Assembly (NCBI RefSeq): GCF_006345805.1
Contig: NC_043000.1
Span: 682,001-746,000 of the forward strand
Length of the DNA stretch: 64,000 nt
Source of the DNA: Octopus sinensis
Taxonomy: Eukaryota
Direction of reading: 5' to 3'
The stretch's first letter is position 1; each line of letters starts with the position of its first letter. The notes beneath the pieces were generated by a model. The model was not told where the DNA came from. It ran no database searches and saw nothing but the letters and a program-made list of their open reading frames with translations. The position numbers and the translations under genes were made by a program. This document shows, in pieces, positions 6,350-58,196 of the stretch.

Positions 6350-6735
6350 TGTAATATATTCATTGACAATTTTTAATGCTGTGTAACTAACCATATATAT
6401 ATATATATATAGTGAGGGCGCGTGGCTTAGTGGTTAGGGCATTCGGCTCATGATCGTAAGGTTGTGAGTTCGATTCCCGGCGACGCGTTGTGTCCTTGAG
6501 CAAGACACTTTATTTCACGTTGCTCCAGTCCACTCAGCTGGCAAAAATGAGTTGTACTTGTACTTCAAAGGGTCAGCCTTGTCACTCTCTGTGTCACGCT
6601 GATTATCCCCGAGAACTACGTTAAGGGTACACGTGTCTGTGGAATGCTCAGCCATTTGCACGTTAATTTCACGAGCAAGCTGTTCCGTTGATCGTATCAG
6701 CTGGGACCCTCGTCGTCGTAACGGCGGAGTCTTTT

Positions 6736-13280: not shown

Positions 13281-13870
13281 ATAATGCGGTTTTTTCAACA
13301 GCTTGAACTAAATGTCAGAGGGGAATGGGATAAACTACTTATATTACTTGCTATAAAAGCAGGTAGTAATTTTATCTTGTCCTTATTCATAGTGCAAGTT
13401 TTGAAGAGTGCATTTCGATTTTAACAGCTATTTTTTTCAAAGCTATATTGGAAGTAACAAAGGGCATTTTGGCATATTTTGCTTTATGAGTTCAATAAAG
13501 ACAACAACGCAACGGAAGTACAAGAATATTAATGCAGTATATGGGGATTGGACAATAAGCGTAAGGCAGTGTCAATGGTGGTTCCAGAAATTCCGAGCCA
13601 TAAACTACAGCCTAGAAGACGAGCCTCATCCTGAAAGATCTGTAGAACTCGACAAGGACATCCTGAAAACCCTGGGACAAAATCTCATCGTAACTATTGA
13701 GGACTATAGAGAGGAGCAGAGAGCTTGGGATTTGGTCATTCACCATTCATTGAGACCTGTGTGCTATCGGAAAAGTCAGCAAATTGGTCAATGGGTTCCT
13801 CACGAACTTTCCGAGTCTAATTGCATGCAAAGAGTGAATGTATGCTTTTCTTTGCTGTCACATCTCACCA
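13281..13870 (+). pseudogene. Mariner transposase N-terminal half
   Basis: NINAVYGDWTISVRQCQWWFQKFR..LEDEP and GQWVPHELSE (WVPHEL motif); frameshifted. Confidence 0.88.
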
Positions 13871-13884
13871 CTACTGCGCTATGT

Positions 13885-14523
13885 ATATATATATATATAT
13901 AAAACTGTAGTTGTGTGAGTGTCTGTCCCCTTCGATTTAGATTCCTAACTACTCCCACATTTTGCGGTGCAGTTTAACCAAATTCGGGTAGCTTATAGTC
14001 GTGATTCATATCGAGCCCGTCTGAGTATTAGCGCGCGTCTACGATGAGTCTACGATTTTAAAAATAATTTAACATTTTAAATTCCATTTTAATGCATAAT
14101 TTTTCGTGTGTCGATTGCGGCGGAGTTGGCGTCCACGCTCACACCTGCACTGTGGGGAAGGGAGTGTAAGGAAATCAACGTCGTAATGCGTTGTCAAGGA
14201 GACCAGCGTTCTTTTAGAACAACGACTTCATGGCTTGAAGACACCAAAACAGAAATGGCTAAGAAAGGCGTCTACATGAGTCTACGATTTAAAAAAAAAT
14301 TTACCATCGTTTTTTTTCCATTTTAATGCATGATTTCGCTATTATATAAGGGAAGTACACTCTCTAAAAATGTCTACGATGAGTCAACGATTTAAAAAAA
14401 AATTTACCATCATATGTTTTCCATTTTAATGCATTTTTTGCTATTTTTTGGCTATAACTCTCTAAAAATGCTTATATAGTTATTTCCCTTACAAACCCGA
14501 GCAACGCCGGGCGATACTGCTAG
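13885..14523 (+). mobile_element. Non-autonomous Helitron
   Basis: 3' hairpin cccgagcaacgccggg followed by CTAG|t; homolog at 58557-58950. Confidence 0.8.
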
Positions 14524-14766: not shown

Positions 14767-15504
14767 CTATATATATACATACATGCATACGTATATTGAT
14801 ATATATATATATATATGTAAGAGAAAAAATCTATCAGAAGGAACTCTATCTCTCTTAAAATATCTTTTGATAAGCATAACAAATGCGCAACCGGTAAAAA
14901 GAACTTTCACCTAATTAAATACACTCTCCCTTACTTAAATCATTTTGTCAGCTTTTCTTCATTTCCTTTTTTATATATCACAACTCGTGTTCCACATCTC
15001 CTTTTTTAAATATATATATATATATACATACATATCTAAGGAAAAAGTTAATCGTCACTACATGTGACTGGAGCGGGAGGAGAAGCACCTACATCGCTAG
15101 AAATAAGAGTCAAACCCTCTTCATGCTGTAAGAGCGCAATATATATACAGTGACAGAGGAAGTAGCCGCGTCATGACTAAAATCACCAGACTAGACTAGT
15201 TTCGCCTGTTTTGTGGACATCATCAGTAGTAACTACTCAAACGGTCGGTGGTTTGACTACCTCCGTCTACCAGTATATATATTTTTACCATAAAAATTTA
15301 TGGCTTATATATATATATGCATACATGAATGAATGTATGCATGTACGTACCTATGCTTGTATTCATTGCTTACTTATTGATATTTTGAATGTGTCAGAAT
15401 TGGTAAAATATGAATCTAGAGTTGATACAACAGCTAGGTGAAGTACTGGGTGCTCGTATGTAAGTAGTGCCATGGTATATTCACCGTTTTTAGAACTGAC
15501 ACTA

Positions 15505-19455: not shown

Positions 19456-19917
19456 TTATTGCTTATTTAGCTTGGGTTCGAATTTATCAATAAAATTTTT
19501 TTCTCTGATTTTCCTCTCGATTTCACTTGGGCTGTGTAATTTGTAGAATGGAAATATTATATATATTTTCCGACCACATGTTGCTAGGTGGTTACTCAAA
19601 GGCATCTGACGGACCTCTGGGTCTCTAATCTGTTGTCGGTGTACACGTGAGCGTTCTAATAGTGCGTTTCCCGTCTGACCTACATATATTTCTTCACAAT
19701 TTGGGCATTTGATGCAGTAAATTAAATTTCTGCTTTTGCAGTTCATATTCGCGTTTGTGAATATTTTCTCGGTTTTTGTGTTTATATATTGACCGGTATG
19801 TATGAATTGGCATGTGCCACATCGGCTATCATTGCATTTAGATACCGTGAATGTTTGGTCTTTGTTGCTGAGGTCAAATTTTGCCTTTGTTAGTAATGTT
19901 TTCAAGTTTTTAGGCTG

Positions 19918-19925
<8 letters not shown>
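19456..19925 (-). mobile_element. Penelope-like element GIY-YIG endonuclease domain, open frame
   Basis: KCNDSRCGTC..NCKSRNLIYCIKCPNCEEIYVGQTG..ERSRVH..IREKNFIDKFEPKLN; Zn-binding linker plus IY-x-YVG, R, E, N motifs. Confidence 0.92.
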
Positions 19926-19969
<44 letters not shown>

Positions 19970-19971
<2 letters not shown>

Positions 19972-20150
19972 TAAATACAAAAGAGCCGAAGAACAAACAC
20001 AAGAAACAAACAACAACGCGAGGATGTGGTACATGCAAAGTATTAGCAGACGTACAGGGAAGGAGAAAAAGGTGATTTTACGTTTCGAGCAAAGCTCTTC
20101 TTCAGAAACGAGACAGAAGAAAAAAAAATCGCCAACGATTCACATGTGGT
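19970..20150 (-). mobile_element. Penelope-like terminal repeat
   Basis: Contains a hammerhead motif; homologous to 61833-62030; same orientation as and adjacent to the GIY-YIG fragment. Confidence 0.7.
20076..20108 (-). ncRNA. Minimal type I hammerhead ribozyme
   Basis: ttt CTGAAGA a gagc-ttt-gctc GAAAC GTA aaa. Confidence 0.75.
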
Positions 20151-26337: not shown

Positions 26338-26733
26338 GAGTGAGAGATCAGTGCATGCCATCAAAGTGACACTAGGTTAAAGTATAAGAAGCCCAGTATA
26401 CCCATCATGACTACCCGTCTGATAAGGGTACACTAGGCACATGCATCACAACCAAATGTACGCGACATGGTGATCTCATATCAAGACAAAAAGCGCATGA
26501 CCTTCTGGTCGAGTAGCCCATCTTGCTCAAAAGGTCCCTGAATAAGGGTTGTTTAAGGATGTTGAACGAAACACCCATGTTTCCAAAGGTGAATTATCCA
26601 AACCTCCAAGAATTCCTTTCAACACACGGCTATGATGCTCCCCCACTACTTCTGCTCGTGGTCAGAGATGCATATATCATCAGCCACCAAGGGACATGCT
26701 CAACTGGTTAAGGTCAAACAACTGACAAGCAAA
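26338..26733 (-). mobile_element. Family D (AAT)n-tailed retroposon, 5'-truncated
   Basis: gagtgagagatcagtgcatgccatcaaagtgacact...; (TAT)n on both sides. Confidence 0.85.
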
Positions 26734-26754
26734 TTATTATTATTATTATTATTA

Positions 26755-31260: not shown

Positions 31261-31978
31261 ATGTGTGTGTGTGTGTGTGTGTGTATACATGTGTGAGTGT
31301 GTGTATGATTGTTTTGTGTGTGTGTGGGGGGGGGGTTGTGTGTGTGCGCACGATCCTTTGTAATTTATGTAGATTACAGGGTCGGAAGTCAAATAGTGAC
31401 TAGATTGACAGTTCCATAGTTTGTCTGGAGCCGAAGTGAGAAAATCCGCTCAGTCCCTCTCTTACTGAGTTCCATCATCTTTAGCAGAAAATTTCGCCCG
31501 GCAAAGCCAACACCATGCCCTCTAGCCCCATTTAGCCCTTTCCCTGCTAGAAAAAAAGGTAAAAGCCTCCCTCAGAAAGAGTTCCTGATTCTGCAAGACG
31601 TATTTGATGGAGTGTTGTGATGTCCATTCCAAATTTTAGAAGTTCATTGTTAATCACTGCTTCTCTTCGTGTATCACTGATGTTCAGGAGGTAATATGAC
31701 AGTCTAGTGATCGTATTCTATACATTCCAGGATTATAGAGTGAATGTTGGTTTTCTCTTGCTTTCTGACTCTTGGTGCATTTTTAGCATCTGTACTTCAG
31801 ACTACTTGTATCTCTAAGTCCTACGTATCCTATGCATTGAGGCGCACTGACTGTGGCGAGATAGCACCTAATTTGATGGTTTCTGCTCTATGTTTAAGAG
31901 ATGAGGAATTATGTACATTATGTACATTATTTACATTATTTACGTTTGACGGATATTTGTCCTCATCTTGTTTCTTGT

Positions 31979-32024
31979 AACACAATGTTTCGGCTTATAT
32001 ACCCCCCAGTCTTCATCAGGTGTC
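31979..32024 (-). ncRNA. Minimal type I hammerhead (family E), slightly decayed
   Basis: gacac CTGATGA a gact..gcc GAAAC ATT gtgtt. Confidence 0.6.
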
Positions 32025-32082
32025 TTGGGGAAATTTCGAACCTGGGTTCTCATTCCAAAGGTATTTTTTGATGTTGTTGTTG

Positions 32083-32127
<45 letters not shown>

Positions 32128-32482
32128 TATATTATTATTATTATTATTATTATTATTATCATCATCATTATTATTGTTGCTGTTGTTGTTATTGTTGTTA
32201 TTGTTGTTCAGGTCACTGCTTGGAATCGAACTCGGAATCTTGGGTTTAGTAGCCCGCGCACTTAACCTGGGTTCTCATTCCAAATGTATTTTTCGATGTT
32301 GTTGTTGTTATTGTTATTATTATTATTATCATCATTATTATTGTAGCTGTTGTTGTTATTGTTGTTCAGGTCACTGCTTGGAATCGAACTCGGAATCTTG
32401 GGTTTTATAGCCCGCGCTCTTAACCCCTACGCCATATGGCCGTGGGCTTAGGAATGAGAACCTAGGTTCGAAATTTCCCCAA

Positions 32483-32529
32483 GACACCTGATGAAGGCTT
32501 GGAGGGTATATAAGCCGAAACATTGTGTT
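32483..32529 (+). ncRNA. Minimal type I hammerhead (family E)
   Basis: gacac CTGATGA a ggctt-ggagggtatat-aagcc GAAAC ATT gtgtt; G-to-A change breaks the ACGT palindrome. Confidence 0.65.
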
Positions 32530-33399
32530 GACAACAAACAAGATGAGGACAAATATCCGTCGAACGTAAATAATGTAAATAATGTAAATAATGTTGGGGG
32601 TTTCTGTTCAGCTTGAGGCGGGCGGTAGCTGTCTGGTGAGTCAGGATGGCCCCTCCCTTCCTTGAAGCAAGTACTGAAAACATACTCGTCCACAGTGTCC
32701 CTTTTTAAGATTATAGGGTGTGATTTGAGGTAGAGTAGGTGGCTATTTCTAGCCTGACAAAAATCACATAGAGGTTCCCACTTTGGTACACACTTTTAAC
32801 TATATAATTCAGAATACGTACATAAACAGGTGCACAAAATTCTCATTTCACTAATCAATGATATAATTATTTCAGTCACTTAATCAATCAATCGATGATG
32901 GAGATCTAATCAATAAATACAGATCTATTTTCCTAGACATTGATCACACGGATATAGAGTTGGTTGCAAAACAAAGCTAGGAGACTTACGAGTATATCTT
33001 ATCGCAAGCAGCAAAAGTATGTTAGTAAACCTATAACAAGTTTTCAAAATAATTAACAATATTATTAAAGCTATCTTAACTATCTCTTCCATTCAAACAC
33101 TGCGTTACACTTTCTTGGACGAGTCCGCAGTTAACGTGTATAACTTCTATATCTACGTTCTTTATATTGATTTGTTATATTTTTGTTTTGTTGTTGTTTA
33201 CCTTAGCTACAGGGCGAGTATTCATTGTAACACTGTGCGAATGTTCATTGTGAAAGATAATAATAATTCTTCTGCGCTCTTTTCATGAATTTCATACAAA
33301 AGAGGCTTATGCTTTCCTAATAGATATTTCTTTTTGTATATCTACCTTATGTTTTTTTTGGGCGTTTTCTGGATATATCCTTGATATATCTCTTAATCT

Positions 33400-38101: not shown

Positions 38102-38517
38102 TATATATATATGCATATATATCTTTGTGTGTGTGTGTGTGATAAACGTGAAACGATTGAACAATTTAGGTAATACCACGCCCGTTTCGGTAGTAAATTT
38201 ATTATCAATACTTTTCGCCATACAATTTGACGTGCAACAAAATGCGAAACTATACAGGGTTGTGCAATAAGGAGTTTACGTAACATTGTCACATCTTCAG
38301 GTAATACTCCACAAGAGGTTTATAATGCCTTATGCTCCGATGACATTATTGCAGCATATCCATTCGTTCCATACTTTTTTTTAATTGTAATTACGCTACA
38401 TTAAACTTACCAACAACCATTGGATAATACAGTTCTGTATTTAAGAGATGAGGAATTATGTACATTATTTACATTGTTTACATTTGACGGATATTTGTCA
38501 TCATCTTGTTTGTTGTT

Positions 38518-38563
38518 AACACAACGTTTCGGCTCATATACCCTCCAGCCTTCATCAGGTGTC
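38518..38563 (-). ncRNA. Minimal type I hammerhead (family E)
   Basis: gacac CTGATGA a ggctg-gagggtatat-gagcc GAAAC GTT gtgtt. Confidence 0.75.
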
Positions 38564-38605
38564 TTGGGAAAAATTTCGAACCTGGGTTCTCATTTCTAAG
38601 CCCAC

Positions 38606-38678
38606 GGGCATATGGTCTAGTGGTTAAGTGCGCGGGCTACTAACCCCAAGATTCCGAGTTCGATTCCAGGCAGTGACC
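38606..38678 (+). other. tRNA-like Pol III cassette (not a functional tRNA)
   Basis: A box tggtctagtgg, B box gagttcgattcc, anticodon-like loop ggg-ctactaa-ccc; acceptor and T stems do not pair well. Confidence 0.7.
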
Positions 38679-38687
38679 GGAATAATG

Positions 38688-38773
<86 letters not shown>

Positions 38774-39315
38774 TACCAGGCAGTGGCTCTCATGGCTTCT
38801 GATCTTAACTGATTGGAAGTGTTATCATGTACATTGTTTTGTCTTGGTATAAAAGATGGGCTACAGCAAATAGTCTGCTCGATACCACAGATTTGCTTGT
38901 CAGTTGCTTGACCTTAACCAGTTGAGCATGTCCCTTAGTGGCTGACGATATGTGCATCTCTGATCACGAGCAGAAGTAGTGGGGGAGCATCATAGCCATG
39001 TGTTGAGAGGGATTCTTTGGAGTTTGAATAATTCACCTCTGGAAACATGGGTGGTTCTTTCAACATCCTTAAACAACCCTTATTCAGGGACCTTTTGAGC
39101 GGTATGGGCTACTCAACCTGAAGAAAATTCTAACTGGGCCCCACCTGCAAGGTCATGTGCTGTTTATCTTGATATGAGATCACCATGTCGCGCACATATG
39201 GTTGTGATGCATGTGCCTGGTGTACCCTTATCAGACGGGTAGTCATGATGAGTATATTGGGCTTCGTATATTTTACCCCAGTGTCACTTTGATGGCATGA
39301 ACTGCTCTCTCACTC
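38774..39315 (+). mobile_element. Family D retroposon inserted in the (AAT)n of family E
   Basis: Longest D copy; ends ctctctcactc(aat)n. Confidence 0.88.
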
Positions 39316-39358
<43 letters not shown>

Positions 39359-39417
39359 TAATAATAACAACATCGAAAACACCTCAGCAATGAGAACCCA
39401 GGTTCGAAATTTCCCCA

Positions 39418-39464
39418 GGATACCTGATGAAAGCTGGAGGGTATATCAGCCGAAACGTTGTGTT
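39418..39464 (+). ncRNA. Minimal type I hammerhead (family E)
   Basis: gatac CTGATGA a agctg-gagggtatat-cagcc GAAAC GTT gtgtt. Confidence 0.75.
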
Positions 39465-39575
39465 AACAACAAAGATGACGACTAAATATCCGTCAAATGT
39501 AAATAATGTAAATAATGAACCATTGGATACTTTTGAATTTACTGAATACCTGATACCCGTGAAATATAATTTCTT

Positions 39576-41982: not shown

Positions 41983-42032
41983 GCGCGGGCTACTAACCCC
42001 AAGATTCCGAGTTCGATTCCAGGCAGTGACCG

Positions 42033-42093
<61 letters not shown>
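41983..42093 (+). other. 3' part of the family E tRNA-like cassette plus (AAT)n
   Basis: gcgcgggctactaaccccaagattccgagttcgattccaggcagtgaccggaataat matches 38630-38684. Confidence 0.85.
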
Positions 42094-42097
<4 letters not shown>

Positions 42098-42537
42098 CAA
42101 TACCTGTTGTCATAGGTGCCCTGGGAATGAAACAATACCTGTTGTCATAGGTGTCCTGGGAATGAGACTAAAACAATAGCTGTTGTCATAGGTGCCCTGG
42201 GAATGATAGCGAAAGGGACTGATTGCTACCTAACTCAGATACCAGGAAACCCCAAAATGGCAGAAATTCAAAAGATAGTGCTCATGGGAACTGCTCATAT
42301 CCTTAAAAAAATACTCTCTATGTAATCCCAAGGTTTAAAACAAACTTTTTTTTTATTTATTTATTTTTTTTTATGTATTAGACATTCACTAGTACAACAC
42401 CAAAAAAAACCCCCAAATATATGGCACAGAACTTCCAACCTGTTGTCTCTTGAGGTCTCTGGGTGAGACTTGGAGCCAACTTGTACAGACATAAAGCAAA
42501 AGTCAAACATCGAATAATAATAATAATATGCATGAGA
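42094..42537 (+). mobile_element. R4/Dong (Rex6-like) LINE 3' end
   Basis: VVIGALGMIAKGTDCYLTQIPGNPKMAEIQKIVLMGTAHILKKILSM*, 3' UTR, (AAT)n on both sides. Confidence 0.82.
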
Positions 42538-50559: not shown

Positions 50560-52030
50560 AAATACTCTACGAGTCTTCAATAACTTAATAGCCAGGGTAA
50601 CAAAACGCAACATTGATCTAAGCTGATTCTGTTGTTTCTCGGCAGGGTCACTATGCCAGTAATGAATACGAGGTCGTATCAAAAAGTTCCCGAACTCGTT
50701 CTGTGGGGCGCCAACAGATGGCAGCACTTGGTTGAGTGCGCAGTGAAAGCTAGCAGTGACCTTCATGAGGCAGCCTGTCGAGTGACGTCACTGTGTTTAC
50801 TTCGCAAGTTGTGAAATTTGATTTTTTTGTGATCACATGTATACTGTTGTTCGCGATTTTGTCATGGATGGGGGACAAAAGCCCAACGAGAAATATTGCG
50901 TTAAACTTCGGAAGTCTGCTACAGAGACATTGAGCATGCTTCGGTAATCTTACGGTGATGGGGCAGTGGGTTGTGCGCAATGTTTCGAGTGGCACAGACA
51001 CTTCAAAATCTGAAAAACGTTCCTGAAAGACGGTGGGTAGTCTGGAAGACTTGCCACGAACGTCATCCCCGGAAATGTGGTATTGTGTATCGAAAATTCG
51101 TCCACCAGAACCAGACCGTAGAGAGTTCAACTGCGACGTTTTGAAGCGTTTTAGTGGGCGCATTCGGCAAAAGCGACCTACATCCTGTCACCGAGCTCTC
51201 CACACTCGCAAGTTTCTCGCCAAAAAACAACATGGCATCGCTTCCGCACCGCCCTCTTTGCCGGATTTAGCACCTGCGAACTCCCATGTCTTCACCAAGC
51301 TGAAACTGCAGCTCAAAGGTCGCCCTTTTAACACCGTTGTCAAAATCCAGAGTGTATTACAGAAGTTCCTCGGTTCGCTCTCGGAAAACGACTTCCAAGC
51401 CGGATTCCAAAAGTGGCAGGGACGATGGGACCTGTTTATTGCGGCGCAAGGCGACTATTTCGAAGTAGATAATGCTAAAACTTGGGTAAATAAGTTATTT
51501 TTTTTATTAAACGTAACTAGTCCGGTATTCTTTTGATACCACCTCGTACAATGAAACCATGCTTGCTGCTCAGACTACTCAGATGGACAAGTCAAGTCTG
51601 ACACATGGAAAAATCCAGAATGCCGAAGACTATTTTCTAGAGTGAGCACAACCAGGGTAAAAGAGTCAGAGGTGTCCCCTCCCTCGGAAGCTTTTCAAGG
51701 GCCAACAAAAACGCCAGCTTACCCAAGCAGGGATAGACCTCGCTGAGTCGAAAGGAGTTGCAGCACAGGGGAAATCATAGCGTGATTGCATCCAGACTGG
51801 TGCAAGAAGTTCTGAGAAAGCCAGAGCTACTGCGGGGAATGAGTCATTGTCACCACCTGCCATCTGATCAAAACCTGCTCATTTGTTCCAAGCGCGCCAG
51901 ATTCTGTTACTCAAGGATCCGGTTACATAGCTATTTAAGGGCTTGCTGCCCTTCCTTATGATCTTCTGGCACGAAAAAACTGCCCTCCTCATCCCCCTCC
52001 TCCTCCTCCTCCTCATCATCATCATCATCA
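50560..52030 (+). mobile_element. RTE LINE 3' fragment interrupted by a mariner
   Basis: LLRWTSQV..MEKSRMPKTIF, QAGIDLAES and ICSKRARFCYSRIRLHSYLRAC*; (CCT/CAT)n tail. Confidence 0.75.
50669..51546 (+). mobile_element. Internally deleted mariner with TIRs and TA TSD
   Basis: ta|cgaggtcgtatcaaaa...ttttgataccacctcg|ta; CVKLRKSATETLSML and PPSLPDLAPANSHVFTKLKLQLKG..AQGDYFE. Confidence 0.9.
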
Positions 52031-57365: not shown

Positions 57366-57761
57366 GAGTGAGGGAGCAGTGCATGTCATCAAAGTGACAC
57401 TGGGGTAAAATATACGAAGCCCAGTATACCCATCATGACTACCCTTCGGATAAGGGTACACCAGGCACATGCATCACAGCCATATGTGCACGACATGGTG
57501 ATCTCATATCAAGATAAACAGTACATGACCTTGCAGATGGGGCCCAGTTAGAATTTTCTTCTGGTCGAGTAGCTCATCCCACTCAAAAGATCCCTGAATA
57601 AGGGTTGTTTAAGGATGTTGAAAGAACCACCCATATTTCCAGAGGTGAATTATTCAAACCCCAAAGAATTCCTCTCAATACATGGCTATGATGCTCCCCC
57701 AATACTTCTGCTCGTGATCACTAAGGGACATGCTCAACTGGTTACGGTCAAACAGCTGACA
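57366..57761 (-). mobile_element. Family D retroposon
   Basis: Follows (TAT)n; matches 26338-26733. Confidence 0.88.
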
Positions 57762-57838: not shown

Positions 57839-58171
57839 GAGTGACAGAGCACTGGGAGTACAAATATACGAAGCTCAATATACTCATCATGACTACCCAA
57901 CTGATAAGGGTATACCAGGCACATGCATCACAACCATATGTGCACGACATGGTGAGCTCATATCAAGTTAGAATTTTTTCAGCTCGAGTAGCCCGTCCCG
58001 CTCTAAAGCTCCCCGAATAAAGTTTGTTTAACGACGATGTTTTTAGAGGTGATTTATTCAAACCCTAAAGAATTCCTCTCAAAATATGGCTACAATGCTC
58101 CCCCTACAAACATACTTCTGCTCGTGATCAGAGATGCACATATCGTTAGCAACCAAAGGACATGCTCAGCT
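57839..58171 (-). mobile_element. Family D retroposon, tandem second copy with deletions
   Basis: Follows (CTA)n-ttattatt. Confidence 0.8.
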
Positions 58172-58196
58172 GCGCATATAACCTTTTATATTTAAA

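What the first reader, a model, noticed from the sequence alone, without database searches (positions are those of the whole stretch)
31885..32594. Second family E copy has its core flipped relative to the long and short arms
Seen: on the + strand both copies have the complete arm on the left (starting g.tct.t.tttaagagatgagg) and an arm truncated in the aaataatgt repeats on the right. The tRNA-like/(AAT)n core points left here and right at 38.6 kb. Inference: either the core inverts by recombination between arms, or RNAs from both strands are templates (each strand has its own hammerhead) and the same end gets truncated.
Basis: partly seen in the sequence, partly recalled or inferred. Interest (0 to 1): 0.72.

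Follow-up and report, generated by a model that had tools for sequence, protein, structure and literature searches.

The report
Octopus Penelope-like cassette with one-sided tail
The "flipped core" belongs to a small octopus retrotransposon built from two head-to-head copies of the end piece of a Penelope-like element, and its one long arm and one short arm are that element class's known one-sided 30-40 base "tail", so no flip needs to be invoked.

Summary
Window 31886-32593 and 38427-39517 are the only two copies of this family in the window. Each has ~140-nt inverted arms around the same core: a tRNA-like head, (AAT)n and a linker. The core points in opposite directions in the two copies. 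In both, the left arm is 30 or 36 nt longer than the right arm. Both right arms stop at the same sequence, ...GTAAATAATG, directly against a target-site duplication (13 and 12 bp).

The arms match the terminal module of a Penelope-like element (PLE). They carry a PLE-type minimal hammerhead, with the hallmark extra base between A9 and G10.1, a 5-bp helix I and an ACGU helix III. They also begin with an ATG-led reading frame. They are homologous to a module that follows a GIY-YIG-like ORF end in another assembly. There the same architecture recurs: head-to-head arms, 8-10 bp duplications and exactly one 35-39 nt tail.

The literature already describes this. PLEs cut and extend both DNA strands, start reverse transcription at two sites 30-40 nt apart, and leave an optional tail at either end. 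So which arm is long is most likely set at integration, independently of cargo direction. Neither core inversion nor two-strand templating is needed, though neither is excluded with two copies. I rate it a new member of a known kind, of moderate interest.

The parts
31873..31885 (.). Left target-site duplication of copy 1 (TTGATGGTTTCTG)
   Evidence: Matches 32594-32606 at 11/13 positions, with 8 exact.
31886..31915 (-). 30-nt 'tail' of copy 1: the extension of the left arm beyond the point where the right arm ends
   Evidence: Alignment of the four arms. It contains UCCUCAUCU, which pairs with AGAUGAGGA in the arm (fold z = -3.5).
31916..32060 (-). Arm L1, on the linker/(AAT)n side of the core. 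It is hammerhead-sense on the minus strand and has 3 nine-base repeats before the tail.
31979..32024 (-). Minimal hammerhead motif of L1, degenerate: helix II is broken and helix III reads ACAU
32061..32446 (-). Core of copy 1, pointing left. It comprises the linker, (ATT/GTT)n, a ~224-bp internal tandem duplication joined at GGTT (partial head 32211-32267), and the full head 32369-32446.
32447..32593 (+). Arm R1, on the head side and without a tail. It ends ...GTAAATAATG directly against the duplication.
32483..32529 (+). Minimal hammerhead of R1: helix I GACAC/GUGUU, CUGAUGA, extra A, helix II 5-6 bp, GAAA, ACAU, U17
32594..32606 (.). Right target-site duplication of copy 1
38415..38426 (.). 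Left target-site duplication of copy 2 (AACCATTGGATA)
   Evidence: 12/12 match with 39518-39529.
38427..38462 (-). 36-nt tail of copy 2
   Evidence: The same stretch is translated in the O. bimaculoides proteins P0038 and P0039.
38463..38600 (-). Arm L2, on the head side, with 2 nine-base repeats before the tail
38518..38563 (-). Intact PLE-type minimal hammerhead. The predicted cut is GAAACGUU^GUGUU, between 38523 and 38522.
   Evidence: Strict descriptor hit, against 0 hits in 200 shuffled windows.
38601..38773 (+). Core of copy 2, pointing right: tRNA-like head (38601-38677) followed by (AAT)31
   Evidence: It is not recognised as a tRNA.
38774..39367 (+). Nested, 5'-truncated (AAT)n-tailed retroposon inserted in the core's microsatellite. 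This is a secondary insertion.
   Evidence: Other copies lie at 26343-26734, 57371-57761 and 57850-58172.
39368..39517 (+). Linker plus arm R2, on the linker side and without a tail. The reading frame's ATG is at 39390. The hammerhead motif is 39419-39464, with G10.1 changed to A.
39518..39529 (.). Right target-site duplication of copy 2
41983..42095 (+). Solo 5'-truncated core (head 3' half plus (AAT)n) without arms. Its head is 51/51 identical to that of copy 2.

Best explanation
Family E is a non-autonomous retroposon of an octopus genome, mobilised by a Penelope-like element (PLE).

What the arms are (shown):
- Each arm is the PLE terminal cis-module. It runs from an ATG (the start of the PLE reading frame), through a minimal type-I hammerhead, to a stem-loop holding 9-nt repeats. 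There reverse transcription can start at either of two points 30-36 nt apart.
- Two such modules lie head-to-head around a cargo: a tRNA-like head, (AAT)n and a linker.

How the asymmetry arises (inferred from published PLE biochemistry, not tested here):
- At integration the PLE enzyme cuts both target strands 12-13 bp apart and primes cDNA synthesis from both.
- One cDNA starts at the inner site (...GUAAAUAAUG). The other starts 30-36 nt further downstream, so it carries the 'tail'.
- Whichever cDNA runs on through the cargo fixes the cargo's direction relative to the tail.
- The two ends can be joined because the long cDNA ends in an arm complementary to the short cDNA.
- The long and short arms are therefore written anew at each insertion, and cargo direction is uncoupled from them. 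Nothing has to invert.
For: (1) The ends are precise.
- Both short arms end ...GTAAATAATG directly against duplications of 13 and 12 bp.
- Both long arms continue with the homologous TACATAATTCCTCATCTCTTAAA..., for 30 and 36 nt.

(2) The arms carry a PLE-type minimal hammerhead.
- Helix I is 5 bp, followed by CUGAUGA.
- There is an unpaired base between A9 and G10.1, then a G10.1-C11.1 pair.
- Positions 15.1-16.1 form the palindrome ACGU, followed by U17.
- These are exactly the hallmarks listed for PLE hammerheads in PMC4209133.
- A strict descriptor gives 3 hits in the window against 0 in 200 shuffles.

(3) A reading frame starts at the arm's inner edge.
- In the consensus, MRTQVRNFPKTPDEGWRVYKPKRCVNNKQDEDKYPSNVNNVNNVHNSSSLKHR stays open through the tail.
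- From the ATG it is 128-140 nt to the inner start site and about 170-176 nt to the outer one.
- In the anole PLE, reverse transcription starts 111-118 nt into the ORF, and the first 172 nt of the ORF are the minimal template (PMC11167929).

(4) There is homology to a real PLE end.
- The arm matches a module in ENA assembly ERZ21867824 at 73-75% identity over 134-151 nt, E about 1e-20.
- In L015 that module directly follows a GIY-YIG-like ORF end.
- L015 8972-10195 and L021 7999-8580 are head-to-head pairs with 8- and 10-bp duplications. Each has exactly one tail, of 35 and 39 nt, starting at the same homologous position.
- All four inverted pairs examined therefore have exactly one tail.

(5) An O. 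bimaculoides protein model links the arm to a PLE.
- P0038 joins the tail and outer arm to a PLE endonuclease C-terminus-like FLDKIQPKLNRL.

(6) The two arms of one copy share derived states.
- These are ACAU versus ACGU, CG versus TG at the repeat border, and 3 versus 2 nine-base repeats.
- This is expected if both arms are repeatedly copied from one template arm.

(7) The literature describes the same features.
- Inverted 5'-truncated copies and a 30-40 bp tail at either end (PMC8557442).
- A 31-bp tail on one of the inverted pLTRs, and unrelated DNA captured between pLTRs (PMC3846280).
- Both strands cleaved and extended, with two reverse-transcription start sites (PMC11167929).
Against: - Only two octopus copies could be examined, and no autonomous octopus PLE with this N-terminus was recovered (one search returned only short ORFs).
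- No Rfam hammerhead model matches.
- Counts across 14 related arms show the pairs fit in register (80% paired, against 12-51% when slid). They give no covariation beyond the shuffles, and only one compensatory pair.
- Self-cleavage is untested, and in copy 1 the motif is mutated.
- Pfam does not call GIY-YIG on the L015 peptide. That assignment rests on in-register BLASTP to PLE endonucleases (E = 9e-4 and 2e-5).
- The inverted-arm|head junction is identical in both copies, so the palindrome is inherited as a unit. The step that rejoins two cDNAs through the arms is my inference.
- The second pair of examples was found through a tail-containing query, which biases one arm of each towards having a tail.
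Confidence: 0.7

Rival explanations
1. DNA-level flip-flop. In a master copy with one long and one short arm, homologous recombination between the ~140-nt inverted arms inverts the core. Two isomeric sub-families then spread.
For: - Arms within a copy are 88-97% complementary.
- The junctions on both sides of the core are identical in both copies, as inversion would leave them.
- The arms of one copy share derived states, which gene conversion between the arms would also produce.
Against: - It does not explain why the short arm ends at one exact site abutting the duplication.
- It does not explain why relatives with different or no cargo show the same one-tail asymmetry.
- It is unnecessary once the tail is set at integration.
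Confidence: 0.1
2. Both strands serve as templates. Because the element is palindromic, sense and antisense transcripts both end in a hammerhead-sense arm. Each can be reverse-transcribed from the inner start site, so the 3' arm is always the short one and the core appears in either direction.
For: - Both copies have the tail at the left and the 9-mer end at the right of the + strand.
- Antisense templates and bidirectional pLTR promoters have been proposed for PLEs (PMC3846280).
Against: - A daughter with a short 3' arm cannot give an antisense RNA that regenerates a full 5' tail, so masters with two long arms would be required. None was seen.
- The tail-bearing end also abuts the duplication precisely, as a reverse-transcription start would and a transcript 5' end need not.
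- With two copies, the shared left/right arrangement has a probability of 0.5.
Confidence: 0.12
3. An ordinary LINE-mobilised tRNA-SINE whose 3' tail is (TAAATAATG)n, with an accidental inverted duplication of its 3' region at the 5' end.
For: - A/B-box-like head.
- Variable 12-13 bp duplications.
- An end in short tandem repeats of variable number.
Against: - The arm carries PLE-specific hammerhead hallmarks and is homologous to the end of a GIY-YIG-associated element.
- No LINE with this tail is present in the window.
- The head is not recognised as a tRNA.
Confidence: 0.05
4. A DNA transposon of the MITE or foldback type with long terminal inverted repeats.
For: Long inverted arms flanked by direct duplications.
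Against: - Duplication length varies: 13 and 12 bp here, 8 and 10 bp in relatives.
- The termini are asymmetric by 30-39 nt.
- The arms have retroelement-type content.
Confidence: 0.02

Closest known systems
Endonuclease-containing Penelope-like elements (Penelope/Poseidon, Neptune and related clades) and their pseudo-LTR insertions
   Same: - Head-to-head inverted terminal modules.
- A 30-40 bp tail on one end only, at either end.
- Target duplications of variable length.
- A minimal type-I hammerhead with an extra base after A9 and a palindromic helix III.
- The module spans the ORF start up to internal reverse-transcription start sites.
- Unrelated DNA can be carried between the modules.
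   Different: - Family E has no RT/EN reading frame and no direct (tandem) pLTR.
- Its cargo is a tRNA-like head plus (AAT)n.
- The whole palindrome, with a fixed inner junction, has been copied at least twice.
Animal non-LTR retrozymes (non-autonomous PLE partners with hammerheads)
   Same: Short, non-coding, hammerhead-bearing and proposed to use PLE enzymes (bioRxiv 10.64898/2026.07.22.740005).
   Different: Retrozymes are tandem direct repeats thought to cycle through circular RNA. Family E is dispersed, flanked by duplications and has inverted arms, so only one hammerhead is sense in any transcript.
Schistosoma Sm-alpha/Sj-alpha SINE-like hammerhead retroposons
   Same: A Pol III-type promoter region followed by a hammerhead in a short dispersed repeat (review PMC6765202).
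   Different: Those carry canonical hammerheads and no inverted arms or tail. The comparison rests on the review's description, not on sequence.
Twin-primed 5'-inverted L1 insertions
   Same: Two cDNAs primed from the two target strands and joined internally. This knowledge comes from my own memory of the L1 literature, not from a tool.
   Different: In L1 the junction differs at each insertion, and there are no two alternative internal start sites or tail.

Membership tests
Penelope-like element, non-autonomous derivative | Terminal module homologous to the terminus of an element that encodes a GIY-YIG endonuclease and RT | tested here: met
   - The arm matches the L015/L016 module at 73-75% identity, E about 1e-20.
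- In L015 the module follows a GIY-YIG-like ORF end, although Pfam does not call the domain.
- P0038 joins the arm to an endonuclease C-terminus-like peptide.
- No RT-linked copy was recovered.
Penelope-like element, non-autonomous derivative | [quoted passage not shown] | tested here: met
   Tails of 30 and 36 nt in the window and 35 and 39 nt in L015 and L021. Each pair has one tail, starting at the same homologous position.
Penelope-like element, non-autonomous derivative | Inverted (head-to-head) or direct pseudo-LTRs flanking the unit, with target duplications of variable length | tested here: met
   The duplications are 13, 12, 8 and 10 bp.
Penelope-like element, non-autonomous derivative | Hammerhead motif in the pLTR with PLE hallmarks: extra base between 9 and 10.1, G10.1-C11.1, palindromic 15.2-16.2, short helix I | tested here: met
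   - Descriptor hits at 38558(-) and, relaxed, 32488(+); 0 hits in 200 shuffles.
- No Rfam model match.
- No significant covariation.
Penelope-like element, non-autonomous derivative | Self-cleavage of the hammerhead, and internal initiation of reverse transcription at two sites | not testable with these tools
   These need in vitro assays as in PMC11167929.
Autonomous Penelope-like element | A single ORF with RT and GIY-YIG domains inside the element | tested here: not met
   There is no ORF longer than about 90 aa in either copy, and all are low-complexity or arm-derived.
Animal non-LTR retrozyme | Tandem direct repeats, each with a sense hammerhead | tested here: not met
   The arms are inverted and the copies are dispersed with duplications.
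tRNA-derived SINE | 5' head recognisable as tRNA-derived, with A and B boxes | tested here: inconclusive
   - The strings TGGTCTAGTGG and GAGTTCGATTCC are present.
- ARAGORN and the Rfam tRNA model give nothing.
- There is 67% similarity to another SINE head at 6416-6481.
MITE / foldback DNA transposon | Symmetric terminal inverted repeats and a duplication of fixed length | tested here: not met
   The termini differ by 30-39 nt and the duplications are 8-13 bp.
Invertible DNA segment (recombination between inverted repeats) | Both orientations found at one and the same locus | not testable with these tools
   There is a single assembly window. Long reads or population data are needed.

The most novel reading that the evidence does not exclude
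Family E may be a self-perpetuating palindrome: a Pol III-type, SINE-like transcription unit that has adopted the minimal PLE initiation module as its 3' end. At each insertion both outer arm ends would be rewritten by two target-primed cDNAs that anneal through the arms. It would then be the first described tRNA-head SINE partnered with a Penelope-like element. Its orientable cargo would also be a natural reporter of which DNA strand receives the tail during PLE integration.
Probability: 0.2. Interest if true: 0.65.

Novelty: new member of a known kind. Interest (0 to 1): 0.4.

Why it matters
How Penelope-like elements integrate is still poorly understood. The origin of their inverted repeats and of the one-sided tail has so far been addressed with one enzyme in vitro.

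This family adds three things:
- **A natural delimitation of the cis-module.** Its arms run from the ORF start codon to the two start sites, about 130-175 nt. That is close to the minimal template mapped for the anole element, and it comes from a distant animal phylum.
- **An asymmetric cargo.** Each genomic copy records which end received the tail relative to the template's direction. A genome-wide tally could show whether the tail marks first- or second-strand priming, and whether antisense templates are used.
- **An annotation point.** It explains a class of octopus palindromic repeats that could otherwise be mistaken for MITEs or invertible segments. It also shows these arms being drawn into gene models.

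Tried and rejected
- **Rfam.** I searched at gathering threshold and at E<=10 on 900, 161 and 121 nt. No hammerhead or tRNA model matched. The hammerhead call therefore rests on a PLE-specific descriptor, not on a curated model.
- **My first hammerhead script.** It demanded a looped helix III and found no helix I. That was my error. The PLE type has a loop-less palindromic helix III, and with it helix I (GACAC/GUGUU) appears.
- **A long-range 7-bp 'helix III' to the 9-mers.** Rejected because no helix I follows it.
- **Metagenome scan with a 19-nt arm pattern.** It gave 12 loci, all bare 19-nt chance matches.
- **Empty-site paralogues of the flanks in the window.** None were found.
- **Searching arm translations to reach more octopus copies.** This gave three O. 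bimaculoides protein models but no octopus DNA. One gene range was too long and two are not on record. The Logan contigs L017-L020 hold only single, old arms next to microsatellites.
- **The 3' UTRs of PLE relatives of the window's own endonuclease fragment (L013, L014).** They show no arm.
- **A possible link between the tRNA-like head and the region upstream of the L015 module.** Not significant: 64 of 500 shuffles scored as well.
- **Independent SINE insertions into an arms-only palindrome.** Rejected because the head always adjoins CCTAAG and the (AAT)n side always adjoins the linker, in both orientations.
- **Fold-back synthesis of the tail.** Rejected because only 9-10 nt of the tail are complementary to the arm.
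Full report
**What is there**

The window is cephalopod DNA. It is AT-rich, packed with microsatellites and SINEs, and translated arm sequence matches Octopus bimaculoides protein models.

Reading both copies shows one architecture in the frame of the core:
- an inverted arm;
- a junction ...CTCATTYCTAAG|CCCACGG;
- a head with A/B-box-like strings;
- (AAT)n and (AAC)n;
- a linker ATCGAAAAATACCTTTGG;
- an arm in the opposite sense.

Both junctions are the same in both copies. The head points to the minus strand in copy 1 and to the plus strand in copy 2.

**Exact ends**

Copy 2 is flanked by a perfect 12-bp direct repeat, AACCATTGGATA (38415-26 and 39518-29). Copy 1 is flanked by TTGATGGTTTCTG and TTGGGGGTTTCTG (31873-85 and 32594-606; 11/13, 8 exact). 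The elements are therefore 31886-32593 and 38427-39517.

Both right arms end ...GTAAATAATG directly against the repeat. In the alignment of the four arms, the partner arm continues at exactly that point with TACATAATTCCTCATCTCTTAAA.... This continuation is 30 nt in copy 1 and 36 nt in copy 2.

The 'truncation' is thus one defined site, not decay. That both long arms lie to the left on the + strand means nothing by itself (probability 0.5). What is informative is that, relative to the cargo, the long arm is downstream in copy 1 and upstream in copy 2.

Both copies also carry secondary changes:
- Copy 1 has a ~224-bp internal tandem duplication of the core, joined at a GGTT microhomology.
- Copy 2 has a nested 5'-truncated (AAT)n-tailed retroposon at 38774-39367. 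Three further copies of that retroposon lie in the window.

**The hammerhead**

No Rfam model matches, even at E<=10 on 161 nt. My first script, which required a looped helix III, found no helix I.

The description of PLE hammerheads in PMC4209133 lists their features: no or minimal helix III with palindromic 15.2-16.2, a 4-5 bp helix I, a conserved unpaired base between A9 and G10.1, and G10.1-C11.1.

The arms fit this exactly: GACAC-CUGAUGA-A-GGCU...AGCC-GAAACGU-U^GUGUU. A descriptor built on those rules hits arm L2 strictly, and R1 when one helix III mismatch is allowed. It also hits two unrelated sites in the window (20105 and 15226, minus strand). It finds nothing in 200 shuffled windows.

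Several arms are damaged:
- Both arms of copy 1 have ACAU instead of ACGU.
- R2 has lost G10.1.
- L1 has a broken helix II.

Across 14 related arms the proposed pairs are formed in 80% of cells, against 12-51% when the partners are slid. Covariation does not exceed the shuffles, and there is only one compensatory pair. The motif is therefore convincing as a PLE-type hammerhead by its form. Activity is untested.

**The arm is the PLE terminal module**

In the hammerhead sense the consensus arm begins with an ATG 7 nt inside its inner edge. The frame MRTQVRNFPKTPDEGWRVYKPKRCVNNKQDEDKYPSNVNNVNNVHNSSSLKHR stays open through the tail.

A profile of it finds O. bimaculoides models (P0039, and P0043 annotated as a dystrobrevin isoform). 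It also finds short ORFs on contigs of other samples.

In ENA assembly ERZ21867824 the homologous module is 73-75% identical to the octopus arm over 134-151 nt, E about 1e-20. Three loci there are informative:
- **L015.** The module sits immediately after the end of a GIY-YIG-like reading frame (...DCVYAILCSCGRKYKGETDRPL...). This frame aligns in register with PLE endonucleases at E = 9e-4 and 2e-5, although Pfam does not call it.
- **L015 8972-10195.** This is a head-to-head pair with an 8-bp duplication (CTTTTGAC). The arm attached to the endonuclease end stops at ...GTAAATAAT, and the inverted partial copy carries a 35-nt tail.
- **L021 7999-8580.** This is an arms-only head-to-head pair with a 10-bp duplication (CATGCGTAAT) and one 39-nt tail.

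All four inverted pairs I could examine have exactly one tail, beginning at the same homologous position.

In O. bimaculoides, P0038 joins the tail and outer arm to FLDKIQPKLNRL, which resembles the conserved C-terminus of PLE endonucleases.

**Fit to what is known**

- Craig et al. describe PLE insertions as 5'-truncated, often with an inverted 5'-truncated copy at the 5' end. [quoted passage not shown]
- Arkhipova et al. describe a 31-bp tail on one of the inverted pLTRs, 8-10 bp duplications, unrelated DNA captured between pLTRs, and palindromes at pLTR 5' ends (PMC3846280). The octopus arm's inner end likewise holds GAACCYAGGTTC and GAAATTTC.
- Frangieh et al. show that a purified PLE protein cleaves and extends both DNA strands. 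It starts reverse transcription at two internal sites whose spacing is the tail, 111-118 nt into the ORF, and needs only the first 172 nt of the ORF as template (PMC11167929).

In family E the distance from the ATG is 128-140 nt to the inner site and about 170-176 nt to the outer one. The start sites lie in and just beyond the loop of a stem, AGAUGAGGA/UCCUCAUCU (fold z = -3.5 for copy 1).

**Mechanism**

Shown:
- precise ends;
- one tail per pair;
- duplications of variable length;
- a PLE-type hammerhead;
- homology to a PLE terminus;
- an identical inner junction in both copies.

Inferred:
- Each insertion is made by two target-primed cDNAs that start at different sites of the same kind of 3' arm.
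- The longer cDNA crosses the cargo, and its terminal arm anneals to the shorter one.
- This makes the tail side independent of the cargo's direction.
- It also explains why the two arms of one copy share three derived states: ACAU versus ACGU, CG versus TG at the repeat border, and 3 versus 2 repeats.

A core inversion by recombination between the arms, or the use of both strands as templates, would give the same two copies. Neither can be excluded with n = 2, and neither is required.

**Limits**

- No further octopus copies could be fetched. The metagenome scan gave only chance hits. The octopus protein models have no accessible DNA.
- The autonomous octopus partner was not found.
- The 'tRNA-like' label rests on box-like strings only.

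**Verdict**

This is a new member of a known kind: a non-autonomous Penelope-like cassette showing the class's known one-sided tail. Interest is moderate, chiefly because the orientable cargo could be used to dissect PLE integration.

Noticed in passing
window 19456-20105 (minus strand): A 5'-truncated PLE fragment. It comprises the GIY-YIG endonuclease C-terminal ORF (Pfam E = 2.8e-6), next to (TA)n, with a separate PLE-type minimal hammerhead at about 20071-20105 just upstream. It belongs to a different family from the arms, with no nucleotide similarity.
   Followed up: partly
window 15186-15230 (minus strand): A third PLE-type hammerhead motif: ACUA-CUGAUGA-U-GUC...GGC-GAAACUAGUC^UAGU, with a perfectly palindromic ACUAGU helix III. 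Its context was not examined.
   Followed up: no
window 41983-42200: A solo 5'-truncated core (half a head plus (AAT)n), 51/51 identical to the head of copy 2 but without arms. It is followed by three tandem 37-mers that repeat the end of a LINE-like ORF (...IPVVIGALGM...). This suggests the core also moves or is copied on its own, with template switching.
   Followed up: partly
window 38774-39367; also 26343-26734, 57371-57761, 57850-58172 (minus strand): An (AAT)n-tailed retroposon family. All copies are 5'-truncated and each is preceded by a trinucleotide microsatellite. The longest copy (inside copy 2) begins with CCAGGCAGTGGC, like the end of the tRNA-like head, so the head may be this family's 5' end.
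   Followed up: partly
window 32211-32446: Copy 1 carries a ~224-bp internal tandem duplication (two-thirds of the head, the microsatellite, the linker and 12 nt of arm), joined at a GGTT microhomology. This fits template switching or slippage.
   Followed up: partly
P0043 (O. bimaculoides, NCBI 'dystrobrevin beta isoform X1'): The predicted N-terminus GEGWRVYQPKCCVNNKQDEDKYPS is arm sequence in the hammerhead sense. An arm has therefore been annotated as an alternative first exon, and the 9-mer GTAAAT is probably read as the splice donor.
   Followed up: no
P0038 (O. bimaculoides A0A0L8H9T6): The arm-derived part of this model stops within 2 nt of the predicted hammerhead cleavage site. It then continues with a PLE endonuclease C-terminus-like peptide. 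This could be a cDNA that ran off a self-cleaved RNA. It is inferred from protein sequence only.
   Followed up: partly
L017 1-183, L019 1-165, L020 40-224: In other sequencing samples (SRR118693xx), single old arms lie directly 3' of (AAT)n, (ATT)n or (ATG)n microsatellites. L017 keeps the same linker as family E. This fits the microsatellite bias reported for PLEs.
   Followed up: partly
window 13408-13902 and 51033-51536: Mariner/Mos1-type transposase fragments: an HTH_48 hit at 13.4 kb, and a typical C-terminal region at 51 kb that Pfam does not call.
   Followed up: no
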